From assembly GCF_001194135.2 (NCBI RefSeq), contig NC_068984.1, forward strand, positions 74,202,575-74,258,646: a DNA stretch of 56,072 nucleotides, given 5' to 3'. The number at the start of each line of letters is the position of its first letter. Position 1 is the first letter of the stretch. The notes beneath the pieces were generated by a model, which was not told where the DNA came from, searched no databases, and saw nothing but the letters and a program-made list of their open reading frames with translations. The position numbers and the translations under genes are program-made. This DNA comes from Octopus bimaculoides (Eukaryota). Of this stretch, positions 2,931 through 12,947 are shown piece by piece.

Positions 2931-4582
2931 TGTACACAAAATAATGTCTTAAAACTTTCTATGTAACAACATATTTACATGTTTAGTCTGCAACGGATGA
3001 AGACGCACATCATAGAAAGGGAGTCATAAACAGACTCCATGGATACCCATATACAAGAACATATGTGCACAGACATTTATATATCTATACACAGGCCTCA
3101 TTGCATACAAATACGGAACGTGTTGATTGTTATAACTACCATCCCTGACGTTTTGCTTCCTAATCTCACTCAGGTTTTACTTGAAGATTGAAATTATTTG
3201 ACATTTGCATCATAGTAGAGTTGAGGCTCTCGAACTGTGATCAGCAGATTTTTAAGGATCATCGTTTAGGATTTAGAAAATTCTTACTAATTACTCTTTT
3301 TCATAGTATATTTTATTATATAATAAATATGATTAGTAAAACGTGATGGGCAAACACTTTCTATGCTTTTACACGTTTAATTTCAATGTAGTTTTATTTT
3401 TAATACATGAGGAGTTATTGATGCATTTTCTGTGGTAAGTGCATCACTAAATAATTTAGTTTCCATGTGAAGTGGACCACTAATTGTTTTCACATTCTAT
3501 GAGAAGGACAATAATAAAGTTCTTACTTTTTATTTTTAATTTTTTTTTTTTTTTTTTTAATTTTCAGTATGCTACGAAGTCAGAGGAAGTCAAATGAAAG
3601 TGATATATATATCGTTCAAAATGCATATGGCTCGAGGCCAGAAGTCTATTTATCCGATAGATTCCTCATCGCCTTCTTCAAGATCCATTTGAAACTGTGG
3701 GCGAGATGTTGTTCTTCAACAAAACTAGTGGGGGATTGCAAGTAGCAGAAACTGGTACACGTAAGAGGGTTAATTTAGGAATTTTGGTAGATTTCAGTCG
3801 AAAGAGGGTGTATCAAGTTGTCAAAACCTTAGAGGCGTTTTGGATACCCCGTACGCATATGCACCTACACGCACGAGCAGGTGTAGTATTAAATTATTGA
3901 ACGCGCAAATCAATTATCAAAACTGTTCTAGTTGAGAATATTCTGTATTATTTTTACGTTTAGGTTATCGGGGTAATTTGAAAGAGATTTGGCTATAATT
4001 TATTACAAGTTGAATAACTACGTGAAGGCTTCCTCGTAGGTTCGACACCAAAGTATTTTTAAACCGGATGTTAAAAATCAACTCATTATCATTTTAACCA
4101 AACAATAGGAGCTCGAGTTAAGGTTTTATTTTTATTTTATTCATAGCCTAATTTATGCAATGAACAAAATTGAATAGAGAATATAAGAGGAAGATGAAGA
4201 GAACGAAGCAGATTGGATAGAGAGAAAGAGTTAGTGAAATACACTGTGTGCACGTGAGTGTGTCTGTATAGGAATCTATATGCATGTTATACAGCAGTCC
4301 CCTACATTATAGAAAGGTTGTGTTCCTGCAAGATTTGCCACAACATGAAATTCCAATACGGAATGCTTATTTTGTAATTAAAGTCCTGTTATAATTTGAG
4401 ATGCGATCCTATAGAACTGTTTTCGGAAAACCGAATAATGCACATCACTTTTCTGTATGAAAATGAATATTTTTGAAATCATAGACTAAAACATTTGAAG
4501 ACAAGAACATTGGGGATTAAATAAGGATGAACATTTAGCTTTCGCTTGAGTAACTAACCGTCGTGGTTATCTGCACAATAGT

Positions 4583-7455: not shown

Positions 7456-8739
7456 TCAGAACCATTTTGTGAATCCCAATAATTCTTCTTCTTCAGCACT
7501 AAGTCCTTCGTAAGAACTATCCGAGCAAGAACTCGGTCGCGGCGAGTTCATAACCGTAGTCTGGTATATTCCGTTAGTTAAACCGGCAGCCGTTAATCCG
7601 GCAGCGGTCAAACAGCTACTATCGAAGATTGTGTTGACGGTGTCACTATCCTCAACAAGGTCTTGTAGGTAGTGTATGTAATCAATGGCTGCTCGTAAAG
7701 TTTCTACTTTGCTCATTTTTTTGTTCTTACTGCCCTTCGGACCGCTCGGTATATGTTCTCTAAGCGTGGCAAAAGTCATGTTGATCAACTTAACGCGGTT
7801 TCTTTCGCGTTCGTTGCGCCGAGCCACGGCAACTGTCTGTGGTCGATGCAACGGCAAGTAGTTGGTGTGGTTGAAATCGAGACGTCGCTTACAGTTCATC
7901 AGCTCGCGTGCGTTCTCTTTCATCGATATCGTACGGACTGATTTCGAATTGGGAGTCGTCGTCGTCGTCGTGGAGGAGGTTGTGGTCGCCGCCGCCGCCG
8001 TCGTCGTCGTCGTCGCTGGAAACCCGTTCGTTGCCGCCACTGCCGTCGTCGTTGAAAACGCGTTCGTCGTCGTCGTCGCAGCCATCATCGCAGTCGCCGT
8101 CGTCGTCGTTGTTGTAGCCGATGACGTCAGCGTCGTCTCTACCACCATTGGTTCCGGCACCAGTGCCGCTGTCATTGTATTTCGTGCCGCTGCTCGTTGC
8201 AATGCAGCCTGTTGTGCCGCCACCACCGCAGTATTCCCAACTGCTGCTTGCACCGCTGCCGCCGCCGCCGCCGCAGCCGCTTGTACTGCTGCTGCTGTTG
8301 ATGATGATGACGATAATGATGATAATGATGACTGTGTTGGTAACGAAGACAGCGATGGTAACGAAGACAGCGATGGTAACGAAGACAGCGATGATGACGA
8401 AGACGATAATGATGATGCTGATGATGCTGATACTGATGATAACGCTGACATTGCTGCTGCAGTTGCTGCCACTGACGATGAAGATGATAATGATGATGAT
8501 GACGATGATAATGATGCTGCTACAACAGGTGGCGCTGTGTGTATTGTCAGTGGCATTGCATTCGATGTGTTCAGATTTGCTATTGGAGAATGTATAGTAA
8601 ACATACAAGCCGGTCGGTCAGTACCGGTCAGTGCGCCCAGCATTGTGTGGCCTTGAACGCTTATCTGTTGTGCAGCCGCCGCCATTGACGCAACGTTAGC
8701 TATAGCACTCAATGATATTGTCTCTACTTGACCATCCAT
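7456..8739 (-). CDS. ASCL1: Achaete-scute family (ASCa/ASCL1-like) proneural bHLH transcription factor, 427 aa, single coding exon
   Basis: ELMNCKRRLDF pre-basic motif, bHLH VARRNERERNRVKLINMTFATLREHIP...NKKMSKVETLRAAIDYIHYLQ and C-terminal SYEGLSAEEEELLGFTKWF all match vertebrate ASCL1 (PELMRCKRRLNF / ARRNERERNRVK / KKMSKVETLR / EEQELLDFTNWF). ATG is in a strong context (aagATGG) with an upstream in-frame TAA near 8821. The symbol denotes family-level homology, not proven orthology. Confidence 0.97.
   Translation of the reverse strand: MDGQVETISLSAIANVASMAAAAQQISVQGHTMLGALTGTDRPACMFTIHSPIANLNTSNAMPLTIHTAPPVVAASLSSSSSSLSSSSSVAATAAAMSALSSVSASSASSLSSSSSSLSSLPSLSSLPSLSSLPTQSSLSSLSSSSSTAAAVQAAAAAAAAAVQAAVGNTAVVAAQQAALQRAAARNTMTAALVPEPMVVETTLTSSATTTTTTATAMMAATTTTNAFSTTTAVAATNGFPATTTTTAAAATTTSSTTTTTTPNSKSVRTISMKENARELMNCKRRLDFNHTNYLPLHRPQTVAVARRNERERNRVKLINMTFATLREHIPSGPKGSKNKKMSKVETLRAAIDYIHYLQDLVEDSDTVNTIFDSSCLTAAGLTAAGLTNGIYQTTVMNSPRPSSCSDSSYEGLSAEEEELLGFTKWF
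8339..8392 (-). repeat. 3 x 18-bp coding tandem repeat encoding (SLSSLP)n
   Basis: ggtaacgaagacagcgat occurs three times head-to-tail on the + strand inside the ASH CDS. Confidence 0.9.
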
Positions 8740-9234
8740 CTTATCTGCTTGTTTGCTTACGTGTTTGTTTGTTTGTTTGTTGTTGTTGTTGTTAATGTGA
8801 CTGTAATTAGTAAAAGTCTTTTAAGTGGTGGTGAAGGTATAAAGTTAATATGATGTTTTTTGATTAAGTCGACAAAAAATATACAAATGCATGCATGAAC
8901 ATTTATATTATATATGTATATCCTTGTGAATGTATGTGATAAAATGTGATATATTTTTTTTTATCACAAATACTTTANNNNNNNNNNNNNNNNNNNNNNN
9001 NNNNNNNNNNNNNNNNNNNNNNNNNNNNNNNNNNNNNNNNNNNNNNNNNNNNNNNNNNNNNNNNNNNNNNNNNNNNNNNNNNNNNNNNNNNNNNNNNNNN
9101 NNNNNNNNNNNNNNNNNNNNNNNNNNNNNNNNNNNNNNNNNNNNNNNNNNNNNNNNNNNNNNNNNNNNNNNNNNNNNNNNNNNNNNNNNNNNNNNNNNNN
9201 NNNNNNNNNNNNNNNNNNNNNNNNNNNNNNNNNN

Positions 9235-9272
<38 letters not shown>

Positions 9273-10309
9273 CGATAATGTGTATACAGGTGTTATGCTC
9301 AGTTATAAGTTTGTAATGACAAATGATGAATATTACAATTACTATGATATCAACATAATATATAATATTAAATTGTAATTAGTTTAAACAAATTCGTTTA
9401 AAACACTACATACACATATATATTCATACATATATATAGTTTTTTAATAATAATTTTTTGTTGTTATTATTATAACGAAGGAAGCAGTAATGTAATCAAA
9501 TGTGTGAAGATATCTCTTTGTAACGAACTAATTATCTAATTAATAAATAATTGCCTTTCTGTGTGACTATGCAACAGATTCGTTTTTGTGTGAATTCTAT
9601 AAAGTCTGTTTTGCCTGCATGCATTTTCATCTGTTATTTTGTTCTGATTTTTTTTTTTCTTCTTGATTGCTGGTATATTATGTTCGATTTATCGATCTCT
9701 CTGTTGTCAGTGGATTGTAATAATCAATACGATCGTCGACAACACGTTTTTCTTTTCCTTTTTTTTCTTTTCTTTTTGATGTAATTGCGGTTCCTTTGGT
9801 TTCACTAGGCAGCTAGTAATATGTATGCATACACTTAGACAGATAAATACATATACATTAATAAATAAATAACTTAATATATATGTTCAGCGTGTATGTA
9901 TATACGAAAAAGGCTTGTTGCATAGATAAGGATGTTTTTTTTTTTCGTTTACTTGATTTTTGGATTATTATCTCTTTCTATATATATATTATATATATAT
10001 TGTATATATATATGTGTGTGTATAGTAAACTGATTGTTACATATAAACATTTGCGGGTACGGATGAGTCTGTAAGTGTGCCTGTGTATATGTATTTGTGG
10101 GTGTGTAAGTGTAAGTGTGAATGGCGTATACAGTCTCCGTAGGTGTGTATGTATGAGCGTGTGTATATATGTGGTGATTTTTTTTCTTTTTTTTTTTCTT
10201 TTCTTGTTTTGGTTTTTTTTTTTTTTTTTGCCAAAGTGCGATAGCCGACGCTTCTTGACTGACTGCCTGCCTGATTCGCCTGTCTGCGTGAATGGAGTGC
10301 CGTCTCACT

Positions 10310-10372
10310 CACAACTGACTGGAAGAACGAGTCAGCCGGGGCTTAAAGCTCAACGTGTGCGGGTCGCGTGGA
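10310..10372 (-). promoter_or_regulatory. Candidate core promoter of the achaete-scute gene (Inr, TATA-like box, Hairy/E(spl) class C site)
   Basis: On the minus strand: TCAGTT initiator with its A at 10316, TTTAAG starting 31 nt upstream (10347), and CACGCGAC at 10370-10363, all in a CpG-containing non-repetitive island. Confidence 0.55.
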
Positions 10373-10419
10373 TAAGCAACCGGGAGTTTGCTTTTGCCTT
10401 TCAAAGCAGGCCGACGGAC

Positions 10420-11135
<716 letters not shown>

Positions 11136-11835
11136 TACATCTCATAAAAGAAATCATCTTTACAATTTTATTTATTTATTTTTTTCTTACCTGCTTGCCG
11201 AGCGGATAGTTTGCTTTTTGATAATGTTCTCTCTTTCTTTCTTTCTTTCTTTGTCTATTTATTCATTTATTTATACACTTGCGGTTTATCTATCTGGTGT
11301 TTTGTTTACCCTTTTCTTAGACATAGTTTGTTATACTTCATACACACTAACACATACATGTATACATACATACACGCATACATGCATACAAAGAGAGCTA
11401 CATGCATACGTACATTCATACATACATACATGCATGCATATATATACATGCATACATACACACATGCTCGTATACATACAGTATAACACGCATGCATATT
11501 CCCATACATTAATACATGCACATACACATATATACATACGCATACACACATACATACATTCATATATATATATACTTTCCTGCCTTTCTTCTTCTTCTTC
11601 TTCTTCTTCTTCTTCTTCTTCTTCTTCTTCATCCTCCTCCTCCTCTTTCTCGTCTGTCGCTTTCTCCCTCACGGCTATCTACCTCATTCGCTCTCCACAT
11701 CTCTCTCTCTATCTCTCATGCTACCTTTCTTTCCTTGCCTAGGCTTTCCTTTCTCCTACCTTGTTCCCCCACCACCATACATACATGTATACATACATGT
11801 ACAACCGTGCGTAAACACATAGCGATTGCTCCATC

Positions 11836-12116: not shown

Positions 12117-12250
12117 GTGAAGGCGCAAGGTTTAGTGGTTAGAGCGTCGATCTTACGATCATGAGGTTGTCAGTTCGATTCCCGAACCGGGCTGTGTGTT
12201 GTGTTCTTGAGCAATGCACTGTATTTTCATGCATTTACGGCTCCGTTGGT
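12117..12250 (+). mobile_element. tRNA-headed SINE fragment
   Basis: A-box-like ggtttagtggttagagc and B-box-like agttcgattcccg, followed by gtgttgtgttcttgagcaa. Confidence 0.6.
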
Positions 12251-12947
12251 GGCTTACGAGCCCTGCTCTTGACAAGCATATACGACTGGAAACATTGCAA
12301 ACCAAGGTTTCCCCATTCTCTACACCACGAGTTCGCTTTCGAGCAGCACATTTAAGTTCTTCATGCAGAAGACGTGCTCTCTCAAAGGTGTAGACCCCGC
12401 TCCTTAACCTGCTTCTCCCATCTGTGGTGCTGACAGGCATTGCTCTCCCAGTCAGTCTCCGGCATATCACAGGCCCTTAATGAGGACTTGACACAGTCCT
12501 TAAATCACAGCCTTGGTTTCTGCTGGGGTTTCTTTCCATTAACAAGTTCCCCACATAACATCTGCTCAGGGATCCTGCTATTCTTCATTCTAATAAGGTG
12601 TCCAGTCCAACGTAACCAGTGCTTGTTCACCATCGCCTCAAGATATCAGCTGTCCTCAGGACCTGTATGTCTGGACTTTTTAAGGTCCAGCCAACATTCA
12701 GAATGTGTCTGAGACATCTCTGATAAAAGCATTCAAGGACCCTTACATGACGTTTGTAATGGGTCCATGTCTCACATGAATAAAGAAGCGATGTTAGTAT
12801 ACATGCACGGTACACAGCAATTTTTGTTTGCTTTGTGATGCCATGCTGGGACCAGACACGAGACTGAAAAGACCGGAAGGAATCAGTTGCTCTCTGCAGC
12901 CTGAAAGTTATTTCATCATCCAGGGAACAAGAACCAACAAATACCAC
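12250..12947 (-). mobile_element. RTE (BovB-like) LINE remnant, late RT to C-terminus
   Basis: SLDDEITFRLQRA...GITKQTKIAVYRACILTSLLYSCETWT...LECFYQRCLRHILNVGW and CNVSSRICLSRAGLVSHQRS. Confidence 0.85.

What the first reader, a model, noticed from the sequence alone, without database searches (positions are those of the whole stretch)
10310..10372. Ancient Hairy/E(spl)-to-proneural repression site sitting in a correctly spaced ASH core promoter
Seen (minus strand): CACGCGAC at about -54 to -47, TTTAAG at -31 and TCAGTT initiator at +1 (10316), in the only clean CpG-bearing island next to the gene; the Inr overlaps an E-box (CAACTG). Known: Drosophila achaete is repressed by Hairy through GGCACGCGAC, and HES1 represses mammalian Ascl1 through class C sites. 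Inference: the Notch/HES-ASH linkage is hard-wired in this mollusc promoter. The match is 8 of 10 nt to the fly site.
Basis: partly seen in the sequence, partly recalled or inferred. Interest (0 to 1): 0.7.

Follow-up and report, generated by a model that had tools for sequence, protein, structure and literature searches.

The report
Conserved HES-type repressor site at octopus ASH

Summary
Inside this window the 8-mer is not beyond chance (1 hit against 0.41 expected).

Comparison across species changes that. The exact 8-mer sits once, sense strand, upstream of the achaete-scute (ASH) start codon in 7 of 9 lineages examined, with a per-lineage chance of 0.5-1.6%. These are Octopus, two other octopod-like loci, their sister lineage, an unplaced lophotrochozoan, a scallop and oysters. 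A limpet has CACGCGAA. The flanks are unalignable. It matches the fly Hairy consensus ggCACGCG(A/C)C except for the 5' GG. So the HES-to-ASH reading is supported, though that linkage is already published for other phyla (Rebeiz et al. 2005).

The "correctly spaced core promoter" is not supported:
- TTTAAG corresponds to TTCAAC/TTGAAC in other octopods.
- The motif-to-Inr spacing differs by 12 nt.
- In outgroups and two octopod loci a TATA box lies 86-104 nt upstream of the site, which puts the site at about +55 to +75 in the 5' leader.
- The proposed leader would be about 1.5 kb with 17-22 upstream ATGs.

No transcript data were available, so the TSS remains open. Verdict: a new molluscan member of a known kind.

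The parts
10363..10370 (-). CACGCGAC, a class C (Hairy/HES-type) box and the conserved core of the finding
   Evidence: Read. It is the only copy in the window. The exact 8-mer lies on the sense strand upstream of the ASH ATG in L001, L007, L011-L015, L021, L005/6, L018, L019 and L003/4. It is invariant in a motif-anchored alignment whose upstream flank shows no conservation.
10354..10360 (-). GCACACG, a second conserved box 2-3 nt after the first; it contains CACACG, which fits CACNNG
   Evidence: CCACGCGACNNGCACACG is shared by the window, L001, L007 and L011-15. L021 has GCGCACG, L005 has CACATG and the scallop has CACGAG (an N-box) in the same register. I noticed this after the fact.
10342..10347 (-).
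   Evidence: It matches TATAAA at 4 of 6 positions. The aligned positions are TTCAAC (L007) and TTGAAC (L011), lying 19 nt rather than 31 nt before their TCAGT.
10313..10318 (-). TCAGTT, an Inr-like element that overlaps the E-box CAGTTG; candidate TSS, unproven
   Evidence: AGTCAGTTG is identical in L001 and L007, and L011 has GTCAGTCG. It is absent after the site in L021, L005 and the scallop. TCAGTY occurs 67 times in the window against 59 expected.
10315..10335 (-). Inverted repeat CTGACT (10335-10330) / AGTCAG (10320-10315) with a 9-nt spacer
   Evidence: The arms are kept in L007 (3-nt spacer) and L011 (GACTG-T-CAGTC). The RNA hairpin is not unusually stable, z = -0.7 to -1.4.
10307..10312 (-). 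GTGAGT, a consensus 5' splice-donor hexamer directly after TCAGTT
   Evidence: It is conserved in O. sinensis. L007 has GTGAGC about 25 nt further on, and L011 has no GTRAG. An exon 1/intron boundary here is therefore possible but not supported across octopods.
10287..10445 (-). Block around the site that is identical between two Octopus species apart from one 1-nt indel
   Evidence: Alignment. A 108-nt exact run (10394-10287) is the second longest in about 11 kb of aligned sequence and is longer than any run in the bHLH coding region. Background substitution rate is 7-10%.
10417..10422 (-). CACGTC half E-box 52 nt upstream of the site, followed by CGGCCTGC
   Evidence: L011 has CCACGTCG 80 nt upstream of its site. 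The significance is unknown.
7456..8739 (-). Achaete-scute homolog (ASCL1-like) coding sequence, single exon, 427 aa
   Evidence: ORF, Pfam HLH, homologs. The N-terminal MDGQ...DRPACMF is shared with P0025, P0026 and P0059, so the ATG at 8739 is credible.
8740..10312 (-). AT-rich, microsatellite-laden spacer between the conserved block and the ATG (contains the N gap 8978-9233); either a long leader or an intron
   Evidence: 71% A+T with 17 upstream ATGs here and 22 in O. sinensis, where the distance from the site to the ATG is 1535 nt with no gap. There is an acceptor-like ttttactaattacag at about 8801.

Best explanation
CACGCGAC at 10370-10363 is a selectively maintained, orientation-fixed binding site for a Hairy/E(spl)/HES-class bHLH-Orange repressor in the promoter-proximal region of the octopus achaete-scute (ASCL1-like) gene.

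Proposed mechanism (inferred): a HES dimer, induced by Notch signalling in cells that stay progenitors, binds the class C box, and possibly the adjacent CACNNG box one helical turn away. It recruits Groucho/TLE through its WRPW motif and shuts off ASH transcription.

The site is the octopod copy of an old molluscan 'site b', which lies 86-104 nt downstream of the ASH TATA box. That position is about +55 to +75, in the DNA encoding the 5' leader, and 8-40 nt before the annotated ATG in non-octopods. It is partnered by a 'site a' (class C or class B box) 63-84 nt upstream of the TATA box (77-84 nt in six of the seven loci).

In octopods 0.45-1.5 kb of AT-rich, repeat-rich DNA has been inserted between the site and the ATG.

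Shown: presence, exact conservation, orientation and spacing. Inferred: the identity of the binding protein, repression, and the TSS position.
For: (1) Match to the known site. The site matches the Hairy consensus ggCACGCG(A/C)C and the eight 3' bases of the functional fly achaete site. HES1 represses mammalian ASCL1/Mash1 through a class C box.

(2) Conservation of the exact 8-mer. It lies on the sense strand upstream of the ASH ATG in 7 of 9 lineages. Markov-1 expectations are 0.005-0.016 per lineage, and there are only 2 hits in 230 kb of background strand-positions. My arithmetic from those values gives about 1e-11 for 7 of 9. Counting the three octopod lineages as one gives about 2e-8 for 5 of 7.

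(3) Unalignable flanks. BLAST finds only the coding region outside Octopus. The motif-anchored alignment shows no upstream conservation.

(4) Orientation. Every class C box within 400 nt of the ATG or in the conserved block is in sense orientation. This includes boxes upstream of the TATA box, which are not transcribed, so the constraint acts on DNA.

(5) Recurrent architecture. Site a lies 63 nt upstream of the TATA box in L005 and 77-84 nt upstream in the scallop, limpet, two oysters, the nemertean Lineus and L021. Site b lies 86-104 nt downstream of the TATA box in the scallop, limpet, L005, L021, L011 and L007.

(6) Within Octopus. The block carrying the site is the second-longest exact match with O. 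sinensis in about 11 kb.

(7) Biological context. Ov-ascl1 marks the neurogenic lateral lips and retina. Squid progenitors express Notch and Hes-1, and DAPT changes their fate.
Against: - No binding, expression or TSS data for any of these loci could be obtained.
- The 5' GG of the Hairy optimum is not conserved. The base before the motif varies (c, c, c, g, a, g, a, t).
- In the window alone the motif is not beyond chance.
- The species of the Logan and ENA contigs (L005, L007, L011, L021) are inferred only from a neighbour-joining tree.
- TSS positions in outgroups are inferred from TATA boxes, not measured.
- Octopus itself lacks a recognisable TATA box at the homologous distance, so its TSS may have moved.
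- The architecture and the second CACNNG box were noticed after the fact.
Confidence: 0.65

Rival explanations
1. One reading: the TSS is the A of TCAGTT at 10316, and the HES box sits at -54 of a TATA-like plus Inr core promoter.
For: The spacing is literally as stated. TCAGT follows the site in all octopod loci, and the roughly 50 nt from the site to TCAGT is the only stretch alignable among octopods. Octopus lacks a TATA box upstream of the site, so an Inr-driven start is conceivable.
Against: - TTTAAG is not conserved, and the motif-to-Inr spacing is 42 nt in Octopus against 30 nt in L007 and L011.
- L007 and L011 keep TATTTAAC 103 and 89 nt upstream of the site, the same distance as the TATA boxes of L021, L005, the scallop and the limpet.
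- The implied leader is about 1.5 kb, 71% A+T, with 17-22 upstream ATGs.
- TCAGTT is immediately followed by GTGAGT, and TCAGTY is common.
Confidence: 0.2
2. The conserved 8-mer is bound by a different factor. One candidate is a bHLH-PAS AhR/ARNT-type dimer: the opposite strand, GTCGCGTG, contains TCGCGTG, which fits the xenobiotic-response core TNGCGTG (from my own knowledge). Another CGCG-reading protein is also possible.
For: The conservation covers CACGCGAC, not the GG that Hairy prefers. The opposite strand fits TNGCGTG by direct reading.
Against: The partner site a varies among CACGCGCC, CACGCGAC, CACGCGTC and CACGTG. That is the known HES/E(spl)/Hey range of class C and class B boxes. 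CACGTG does not fit GCGTG. Direct HES repression of ASH genes is established in flies and mammals.
Confidence: 0.12
3. The element works in the RNA, as a 5'-leader motif or hairpin controlling ASH translation or stability. This would explain the fixed sense orientation.
For: In non-octopods the site is 8-40 nt before the annotated ATG, inside the inferred leader. An inverted repeat follows it in octopods.
Against: - Boxes upstream of the TATA box share the same orientation.
- In octopods the site stayed with the promoter side while the ATG moved 0.45-1.5 kb away.
- The hairpins are not unusually stable, z = -0.7 to -1.4.
- There is no Rfam match.
Confidence: 0.05
4. It is a chance match with no function.
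For: Within the window alone, 1 hit against 0.41 expected.
Against: The exact 8-mer recurs in the same orientation in 7 of 9 lineages, with a per-lineage chance of 0.016 or less and unalignable flanks.
Confidence: 0.01

Closest known systems
Hairy binding site of Drosophila achaete (GGCACGCGAC; Ohsako et al. 1994, Van Doren et al. 1994, as cited in PMC449821)
   Same: It has the same eight bases, CACGCGAC, attached to an achaete-scute family gene close to its promoter. The expected action is the same: a class C box bound by a WRPW bHLH repressor.
   Different: The 5' GG is TC in Octopus and is variable across molluscs. The position appears to be downstream of the TSS rather than upstream. Binding has not been tested.
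HES1 class C site of human/mouse ASCL1 (hASH1/Mash1)
   Same: It is a class C box in the promoter of the orthologous proneural gene, mediating Notch-dependent repression.
   Different: The mammalian core is CACGCA, whereas the molluscan core is CACGCG with an AC flank. The mammalian site has EMSA, ChIP and reporter support; this one has none.
'An ancient transcriptional regulatory linkage' (Rebeiz, Stone and Posakony 2005, Dev Biol 281:299)
   Same: The claim is the same: direct H/E(spl)-to-ASH repression through a conserved promoter-proximal site across distant animals. It is cited in that sense in PMC2958161 and PMC3988846.
   Different: The paper is not held in the library, so I could not check which taxa it covers. 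My recollection is arthropods and vertebrates, which would make molluscs and cephalopods an extension. The two-site, fixed-spacing layout seen here may or may not be described there.
Drosophila-type TATA/Inr core promoter (Inr TCAGTY, TATA box at about -30)
   Same: TCAGTT matches the fly Inr, and TTTAAG sits 31 nt upstream of it.
   Different: The TATA-like element and the spacing are not conserved even among octopods, and no TSS evidence exists.

Membership tests
Hairy/E(spl)/HES class C binding site | Core hexamer CACGCG | tested here: met
   10370-10365 on the minus strand.
Hairy/E(spl)/HES class C binding site | Flanks of the Hairy optimum, ggCACGCG(A/C)C (PMC449821) | tested here: inconclusive
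   The 3' AC is present and invariant across lineages. The 5' GG is absent (TC here) and variable elsewhere.
Hairy/E(spl)/HES class C binding site | Bound by a HES-family protein in vitro or in vivo | not testable with these tools
   This needs EMSA, DAP-seq or ChIP with cephalopod HES proteins.
Hairy/E(spl)/HES class C binding site | Mutation de-represses the target, or loss of Notch raises ASH expression | not testable with these tools
   The only context available is that squid progenitors express Notch and Hes-1 and respond to DAPT.
Conserved H/E(spl)-to-ASH promoter-proximal linkage (Rebeiz et al. 2005) | The target is an achaete-scute family (ASCa) gene | tested here: met
   Pfam HLH domain; the best hits are ASCL1-type proteins of molluscs and vertebrates.
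Conserved H/E(spl)-to-ASH promoter-proximal linkage (Rebeiz et al. 2005) | The site is retained in orthologous position across distant taxa while the surrounding sequence diverges | tested here: met
TATA plus Inr core promoter with TSS at 10316 | Inr consensus at the start site | tested here: inconclusive
   TCAGTT is present and TCAGT is conserved in octopods. However, the motif is common and forms part of an inverted repeat.
TATA plus Inr core promoter with TSS at 10316 | TATA box at -31 to -24, conserved | tested here: not met
   TTTAAG matches TATAAA at 4 of 6 positions. It is TTCAAC/TTGAAC at about -19 in L007 and L011.
TATA plus Inr core promoter with TSS at 10316 | Transcripts start there | not testable with these tools
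   No transcript data were available. The Logan contigs end in microsatellites without poly(A) and look genomic.

The most novel reading that the evidence does not exclude
Lophotrochozoan ASH genes may carry a rigid promoter grammar more than 500 million years old. It would consist of two sense-oriented HES boxes bracketing the start site. Site a lies 63-84 nt upstream of the TATA box, and site b about 90-100 nt downstream of it. Site b carries a second CACNNG box one helical turn away. Such a layout would imply a geometrically constrained repressor complex clamping the TSS, for example HES dimers bridged by Groucho oligomers. Octopods would have kept site b with the promoter while inserting 0.45-1.5 kb, possibly a new 5'-leader intron, before the ATG.
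Probability: 0.3. Interest if true: 0.6.

Novelty: new member of a known kind. Interest (0 to 1): 0.45.

Why it matters
Individual transcription-factor sites rarely survive hundreds of millions of years. An exact 8-mer kept in the same orientation at the same gene in cephalopods and bivalves, with a one-base variant in a limpet, and matching the functional fly site, is a clean example in Lophotrochozoa of the Notch/HES-to-proneural linkage. It gives cephalopod neurobiologists a specific, mutable DNA target for testing whether lateral inhibition controls ascl1 in the octopus neurogenic zone. The fixed spacing of two HES-type boxes around the TATA box, if real, is a testable case of promoter grammar. 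The general idea is already published, so the gain is extension and detail rather than a new principle.

Tried and rejected
(1) Nucleotide BLAST of the 3-5 kb upstream region against all fetched orthologous loci. Only the coding sequence aligned outside Octopus. An unanchored MAFFT alignment misplaced the motif. Anchoring on the motif was needed.

(2) My first impression was that the block is 100% identical against an 84% background. This was overstated. Most of the 16% is microsatellite indels, and the substitution rate is 7-10%. The block is nevertheless the second-longest exact run.

(3) Hypothesis that TCAGTT|GTGAGT is the end of a non-coding exon 1, with the acceptor at about 8801. The donor is perfect in both Octopus species. 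It is displaced in L007 (GTGAGC) and absent in L011, and the branch-point-like TACTAAT is TATTAAT in O. sinensis. I kept this as an open possibility and did not adopt it.

(4) Using the Logan contigs as transcripts to read the 5' end. The contigs end in (TG)n, (TA)n or (GATA)n repeats, lack poly(A) and carry SNPs between runs, so they are probably genomic and say nothing about the TSS.

(5) I first took L003/L004 for a squid. Its upstream region is colinear with Saccostrea, so it is an oyster. L005 could not be placed.

(6) RNA hairpin at the inverted repeat: not significant. Rfam: only two sub-threshold mir-297 matches in microsatellite sequence.

(7) Rebeiz et al. 2005 and Rebeiz et al. 2012 could not be read.

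(8) A Markov simulation timed out. I replaced it with an analytic expectation.

Full report
**What is in the window**

CACGCGAC is at 10370-10363, TTTAAG at 10347-10342, and TCAGTT at 10318-10313 with its A at 10316. The 10-mer TCCACGCGAC matches the fly achaete Hairy site GGCACGCGAC at 8 of 10 positions. The fly oligo and the Hairy consensus ggCACGCG(A/C)C are given in PMC449821.

Taken alone, none of this exceeds chance:
- CACGCGAC: 1 hit against 0.41 expected, and 34 of 100 shuffles have one.
- CACGCG: 11 against 8.2 expected.
- TCAGTY: 67 against 59 expected.

The "CpG island" is modest. There are 13 CpG in 200 nt with observed/expected 1.05, against 0.88 for the whole window.

**The gene**

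The nearest gene is a single-exon minus-strand ORF, 8739-7456, of 427 aa. It has a bHLH domain (Pfam HLH, E = 2e-17). Its best hit is "achaete-scute homolog 1a-like [Octopus sinensis]", followed by ASCL1-type proteins of molluscs and vertebrates. Its N-terminus (MDGQ...DRPACMF) is shared with orthologs, so the ATG at 8739 is credible.

The proposed +1 lies 1577 nt upstream of that ATG, including an N gap. In O. sinensis, which has no gap, the site-to-ATG distance is 1535 nt.

**Octopus against Octopus**

The O. sinensis locus (L001) aligns across the whole region. Much of the apparent divergence is microsatellite indels, and the substitution rate is 7-10%.

The block 10445-10287 differs only by a 1-nt indel. 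Its 108-nt exact run (10394-10287) is the second longest in about 11 kb of alignment and is longer than any run in the bHLH coding part. The block is therefore constrained, but two congeners cannot say which bases matter.

**Deep conservation of the 8-mer**

I fetched orthologous loci through their proteins:
- Two octopod-like loci: L007 (a 215-kb ENA contig) and L011-L016.
- L021, the sister of the octopod clade in a neighbour-joining tree.
- L005/L006, an unplaced lophotrochozoan.
- L003/L004, which turned out to be an oyster because its upstream region is colinear with Saccostrea.
- Four named species: Patella vulgata, Mizuhopecten yessoensis, Saccostrea cucullata and the nemertean Lineus longissimus.

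Outside Octopus only the coding region aligns by BLAST. Yet CACGCGAC occurs on the sense strand upstream of the ATG in these loci:

| Locus | Position of CACGCGAC relative to the ATG |
|---|---|
| Window (Octopus) | -1631 |
| O. sinensis (L001) | -1535 |
| L007 (octopod-like) | -544 |
| L011 (octopod-like) | -452 |
| L021 (sister of octopods) | -36 |
| L005 (unplaced) | -40 |
| Mizuhopecten (scallop) | -8 |
| Saccostrea (oyster) | -290 and -227 |
| L003 (oyster) | -241 |

Patella has CACGCGAA at -17, and Lineus has CACGCGTC at -245.

A Markov-1 model expects 0.005-0.016 hits per lineage in up to 2 kb of upstream sequence. Only 2 hits occur in 230 kb of background strand-positions. By my arithmetic, 7 of 9 lineages at p of 0.016 or less is about 1e-11. 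Counting the three octopod lineages as one gives about 2e-8.

In a motif-anchored alignment the upstream flank shows no conservation, while the 8-mer is invariant.

**Where the site sits**

The non-octopod loci share a layout.

1. A class C or class B box ("site a") lies upstream of a canonical TATA box. The spacing is 77-84 nt in six of the seven loci and 63 nt in L005.
   - Scallop: CACGCGCC
   - Oysters: CACGCGAC
   - Limpet: CACGTG
   - Lineus: CACGCGTC
   - L005: CACGCGTC
   - L021: CCACGTGCC
2. A GGAGCCTAT-like box lies between site a and the TATA box.
3. A second box ("site b") lies 86-104 nt downstream of the TATA box and just before the ATG. It is CACGCGAC in the scallop, L005 and L021, and CACGCGAA in the limpet.

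The octopod site is homologous to site b. L021 reads CACGCGAC-ta-GCGCACG, and the octopods read CACGCGAC-nn-GCACACG. L011 and L007 keep a shared TATTTAAC 89 and 103 nt upstream of the site.

With the usual 25-35 nt from TATA box to start, the ancestral site lies at about +55 to +75, not at -54. Octopus itself has no recognisable TATA box at that distance, because purine-rich repeats have expanded there. Its TSS may therefore have moved.

In its favour, TCAGT follows the site in all octopod loci: AGTCAGTTG in the window, L001 and L007, and GTCAGTCG in L011. The roughly 50 nt from the site to TCAGT is the only stretch alignable among octopods.

Against it:
- TTTAAG is TTCAAC/TTGAAC elsewhere.
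- Octopus has 12 extra bases, so the "correct" -31 spacing is -19 in the other octopods.
- TCAGT is one arm of an inverted repeat (CTGACT/AGTCAG) kept with spacers of 9, 3 and 1 nt.
- TCAGTT is directly followed by the splice-donor consensus GTGAGT.
- The implied leader is 71% A+T with 17-22 upstream ATGs.

I tested whether the block is instead a non-coding exon ending at 10313. The donor is not conserved in L011 and is displaced in L007, so that idea stays open rather than adopted.

The Logan contigs end in microsatellites and look genomic, so they give no TSS information. I put the probability of a TSS at 10316 at about 0.2.

**Mechanism**

The best reading is a HES-class repressor site. The evidence is as follows.
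- The core and 3' flank match the Hairy optimum.
- The partner site a ranges over exactly the class C and class B boxes that Hairy, E(spl), HES and Hey bind.
- All of these boxes share the sense orientation, including those upstream of the TATA box. This argues for a DNA-level rather than RNA-level constraint.
- In octopods the site stayed with the promoter side when the ATG moved away.
- Direct HES repression of ASH genes is established in flies and mammals.
- Ov-ascl1 marks octopus neural progenitors.
- Squid progenitors express Notch and Hes-1 and change fate under DAPT.

A second CACNNG box sits 3 nt after the 8-mer in the same register: CACACG in octopods, CACATG in L005, and the N-box CACGAG in the scallop. 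I noticed this after the fact.

Binding and repression are inferred, not shown. The rivals are:
- A bHLH-PAS or other CGCG-reading factor. The opposite strand fits TNGCGTG (my own knowledge).
- An RNA-level leader element. The hairpins are not significant and there is no Rfam match.
- Chance.

**Novelty**

The idea that H/E(spl) proteins directly repress ASH genes through a conserved promoter-proximal site in distant animals is the subject of Rebeiz, Stone and Posakony 2005. It is cited in that sense in PMC2958161 and PMC3988846. I could not read that paper or its 2012 successor. A full-text search found no paper in the library describing such a site at a molluscan ASH gene.

The octopus site is therefore a new, well-supported member of a known kind. 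The two-site, fixed-spacing layout and the octopod insertion are the details that might be new.

**Limits**

- There are no transcript, binding or expression data.
- The species of four loci are inferred only from a tree.
- Outgroup TSSs are inferred from TATA boxes.
- The architectural regularities were found after looking.

Noticed in passing
window 10769-10960 and 11586-11777: A 192-nt direct repeat (97% identical, 817 nt apart) lies upstream of the ASH block. It is embedded in long (GAA)n, (GGA)n and (GA)n purine tracts. It may be a local duplication or the ends of an inserted element.
   Followed up: partly
window 3187-3296: This is the longest exact match with O. sinensis in about 11 kb of alignment (110 nt). 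It lies about 4.2 kb downstream of the ASH stop codon. It could be a distal 3' regulatory element or part of a long 3' UTR.
   Followed up: no
window 10315-10335; L007 about 9487-9504; L011 about 184-194: The inverted repeat CTGACT/AGTCAG is kept in three octopod lineages with spacers of 9, 3 and 1 nt, and it includes the Inr-like TCAGT. The RNA fold is not unusually stable, z = -0.7 to -1.4.
   Followed up: partly
L017-L021, L003 and L005, upstream of the ASH ATG: A GGAGCCTAT-like box (GGAGCCTAT, GGGGCCTAT, GTGGCCTCA, GGAGCCTAC, GGAGCCCAG) recurs 10-30 nt upstream of the TATA box in the scallop, limpet, oysters, L005 and Lineus. A class C or B box recurs 63-84 nt upstream of the TATA box.
   Followed up: partly
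window 8740-10312: The stretch between the conserved block and the ASH ATG is 71% A+T, full of microsatellites, holds an assembly gap (8978-9233) and carries 17 upstream ATGs (22 in O. sinensis). An acceptor-like ttttactaattacag lies at about 8801.
   Followed up: partly
window 12159-12947, minus strand: ORF fragments here look like the C-terminal part of a LINE-type reverse transcriptase. This judgement is by eye only. They lie just upstream of the ASH regulatory region.
   Followed up: no
L001 (O. sinensis) 9467 against the annotated start at 10001: The public O. sinensis protein model (242 aa) starts at an internal methionine. The longer ORF with the conserved N-terminus, starting at L001 9467, is intact there too, so the annotation is probably truncated.
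   Followed up: partly
L021 about 2131: A second CACGCGAC, sense strand, lies about 480 nt downstream of the stop codon in L021.
   Followed up: no
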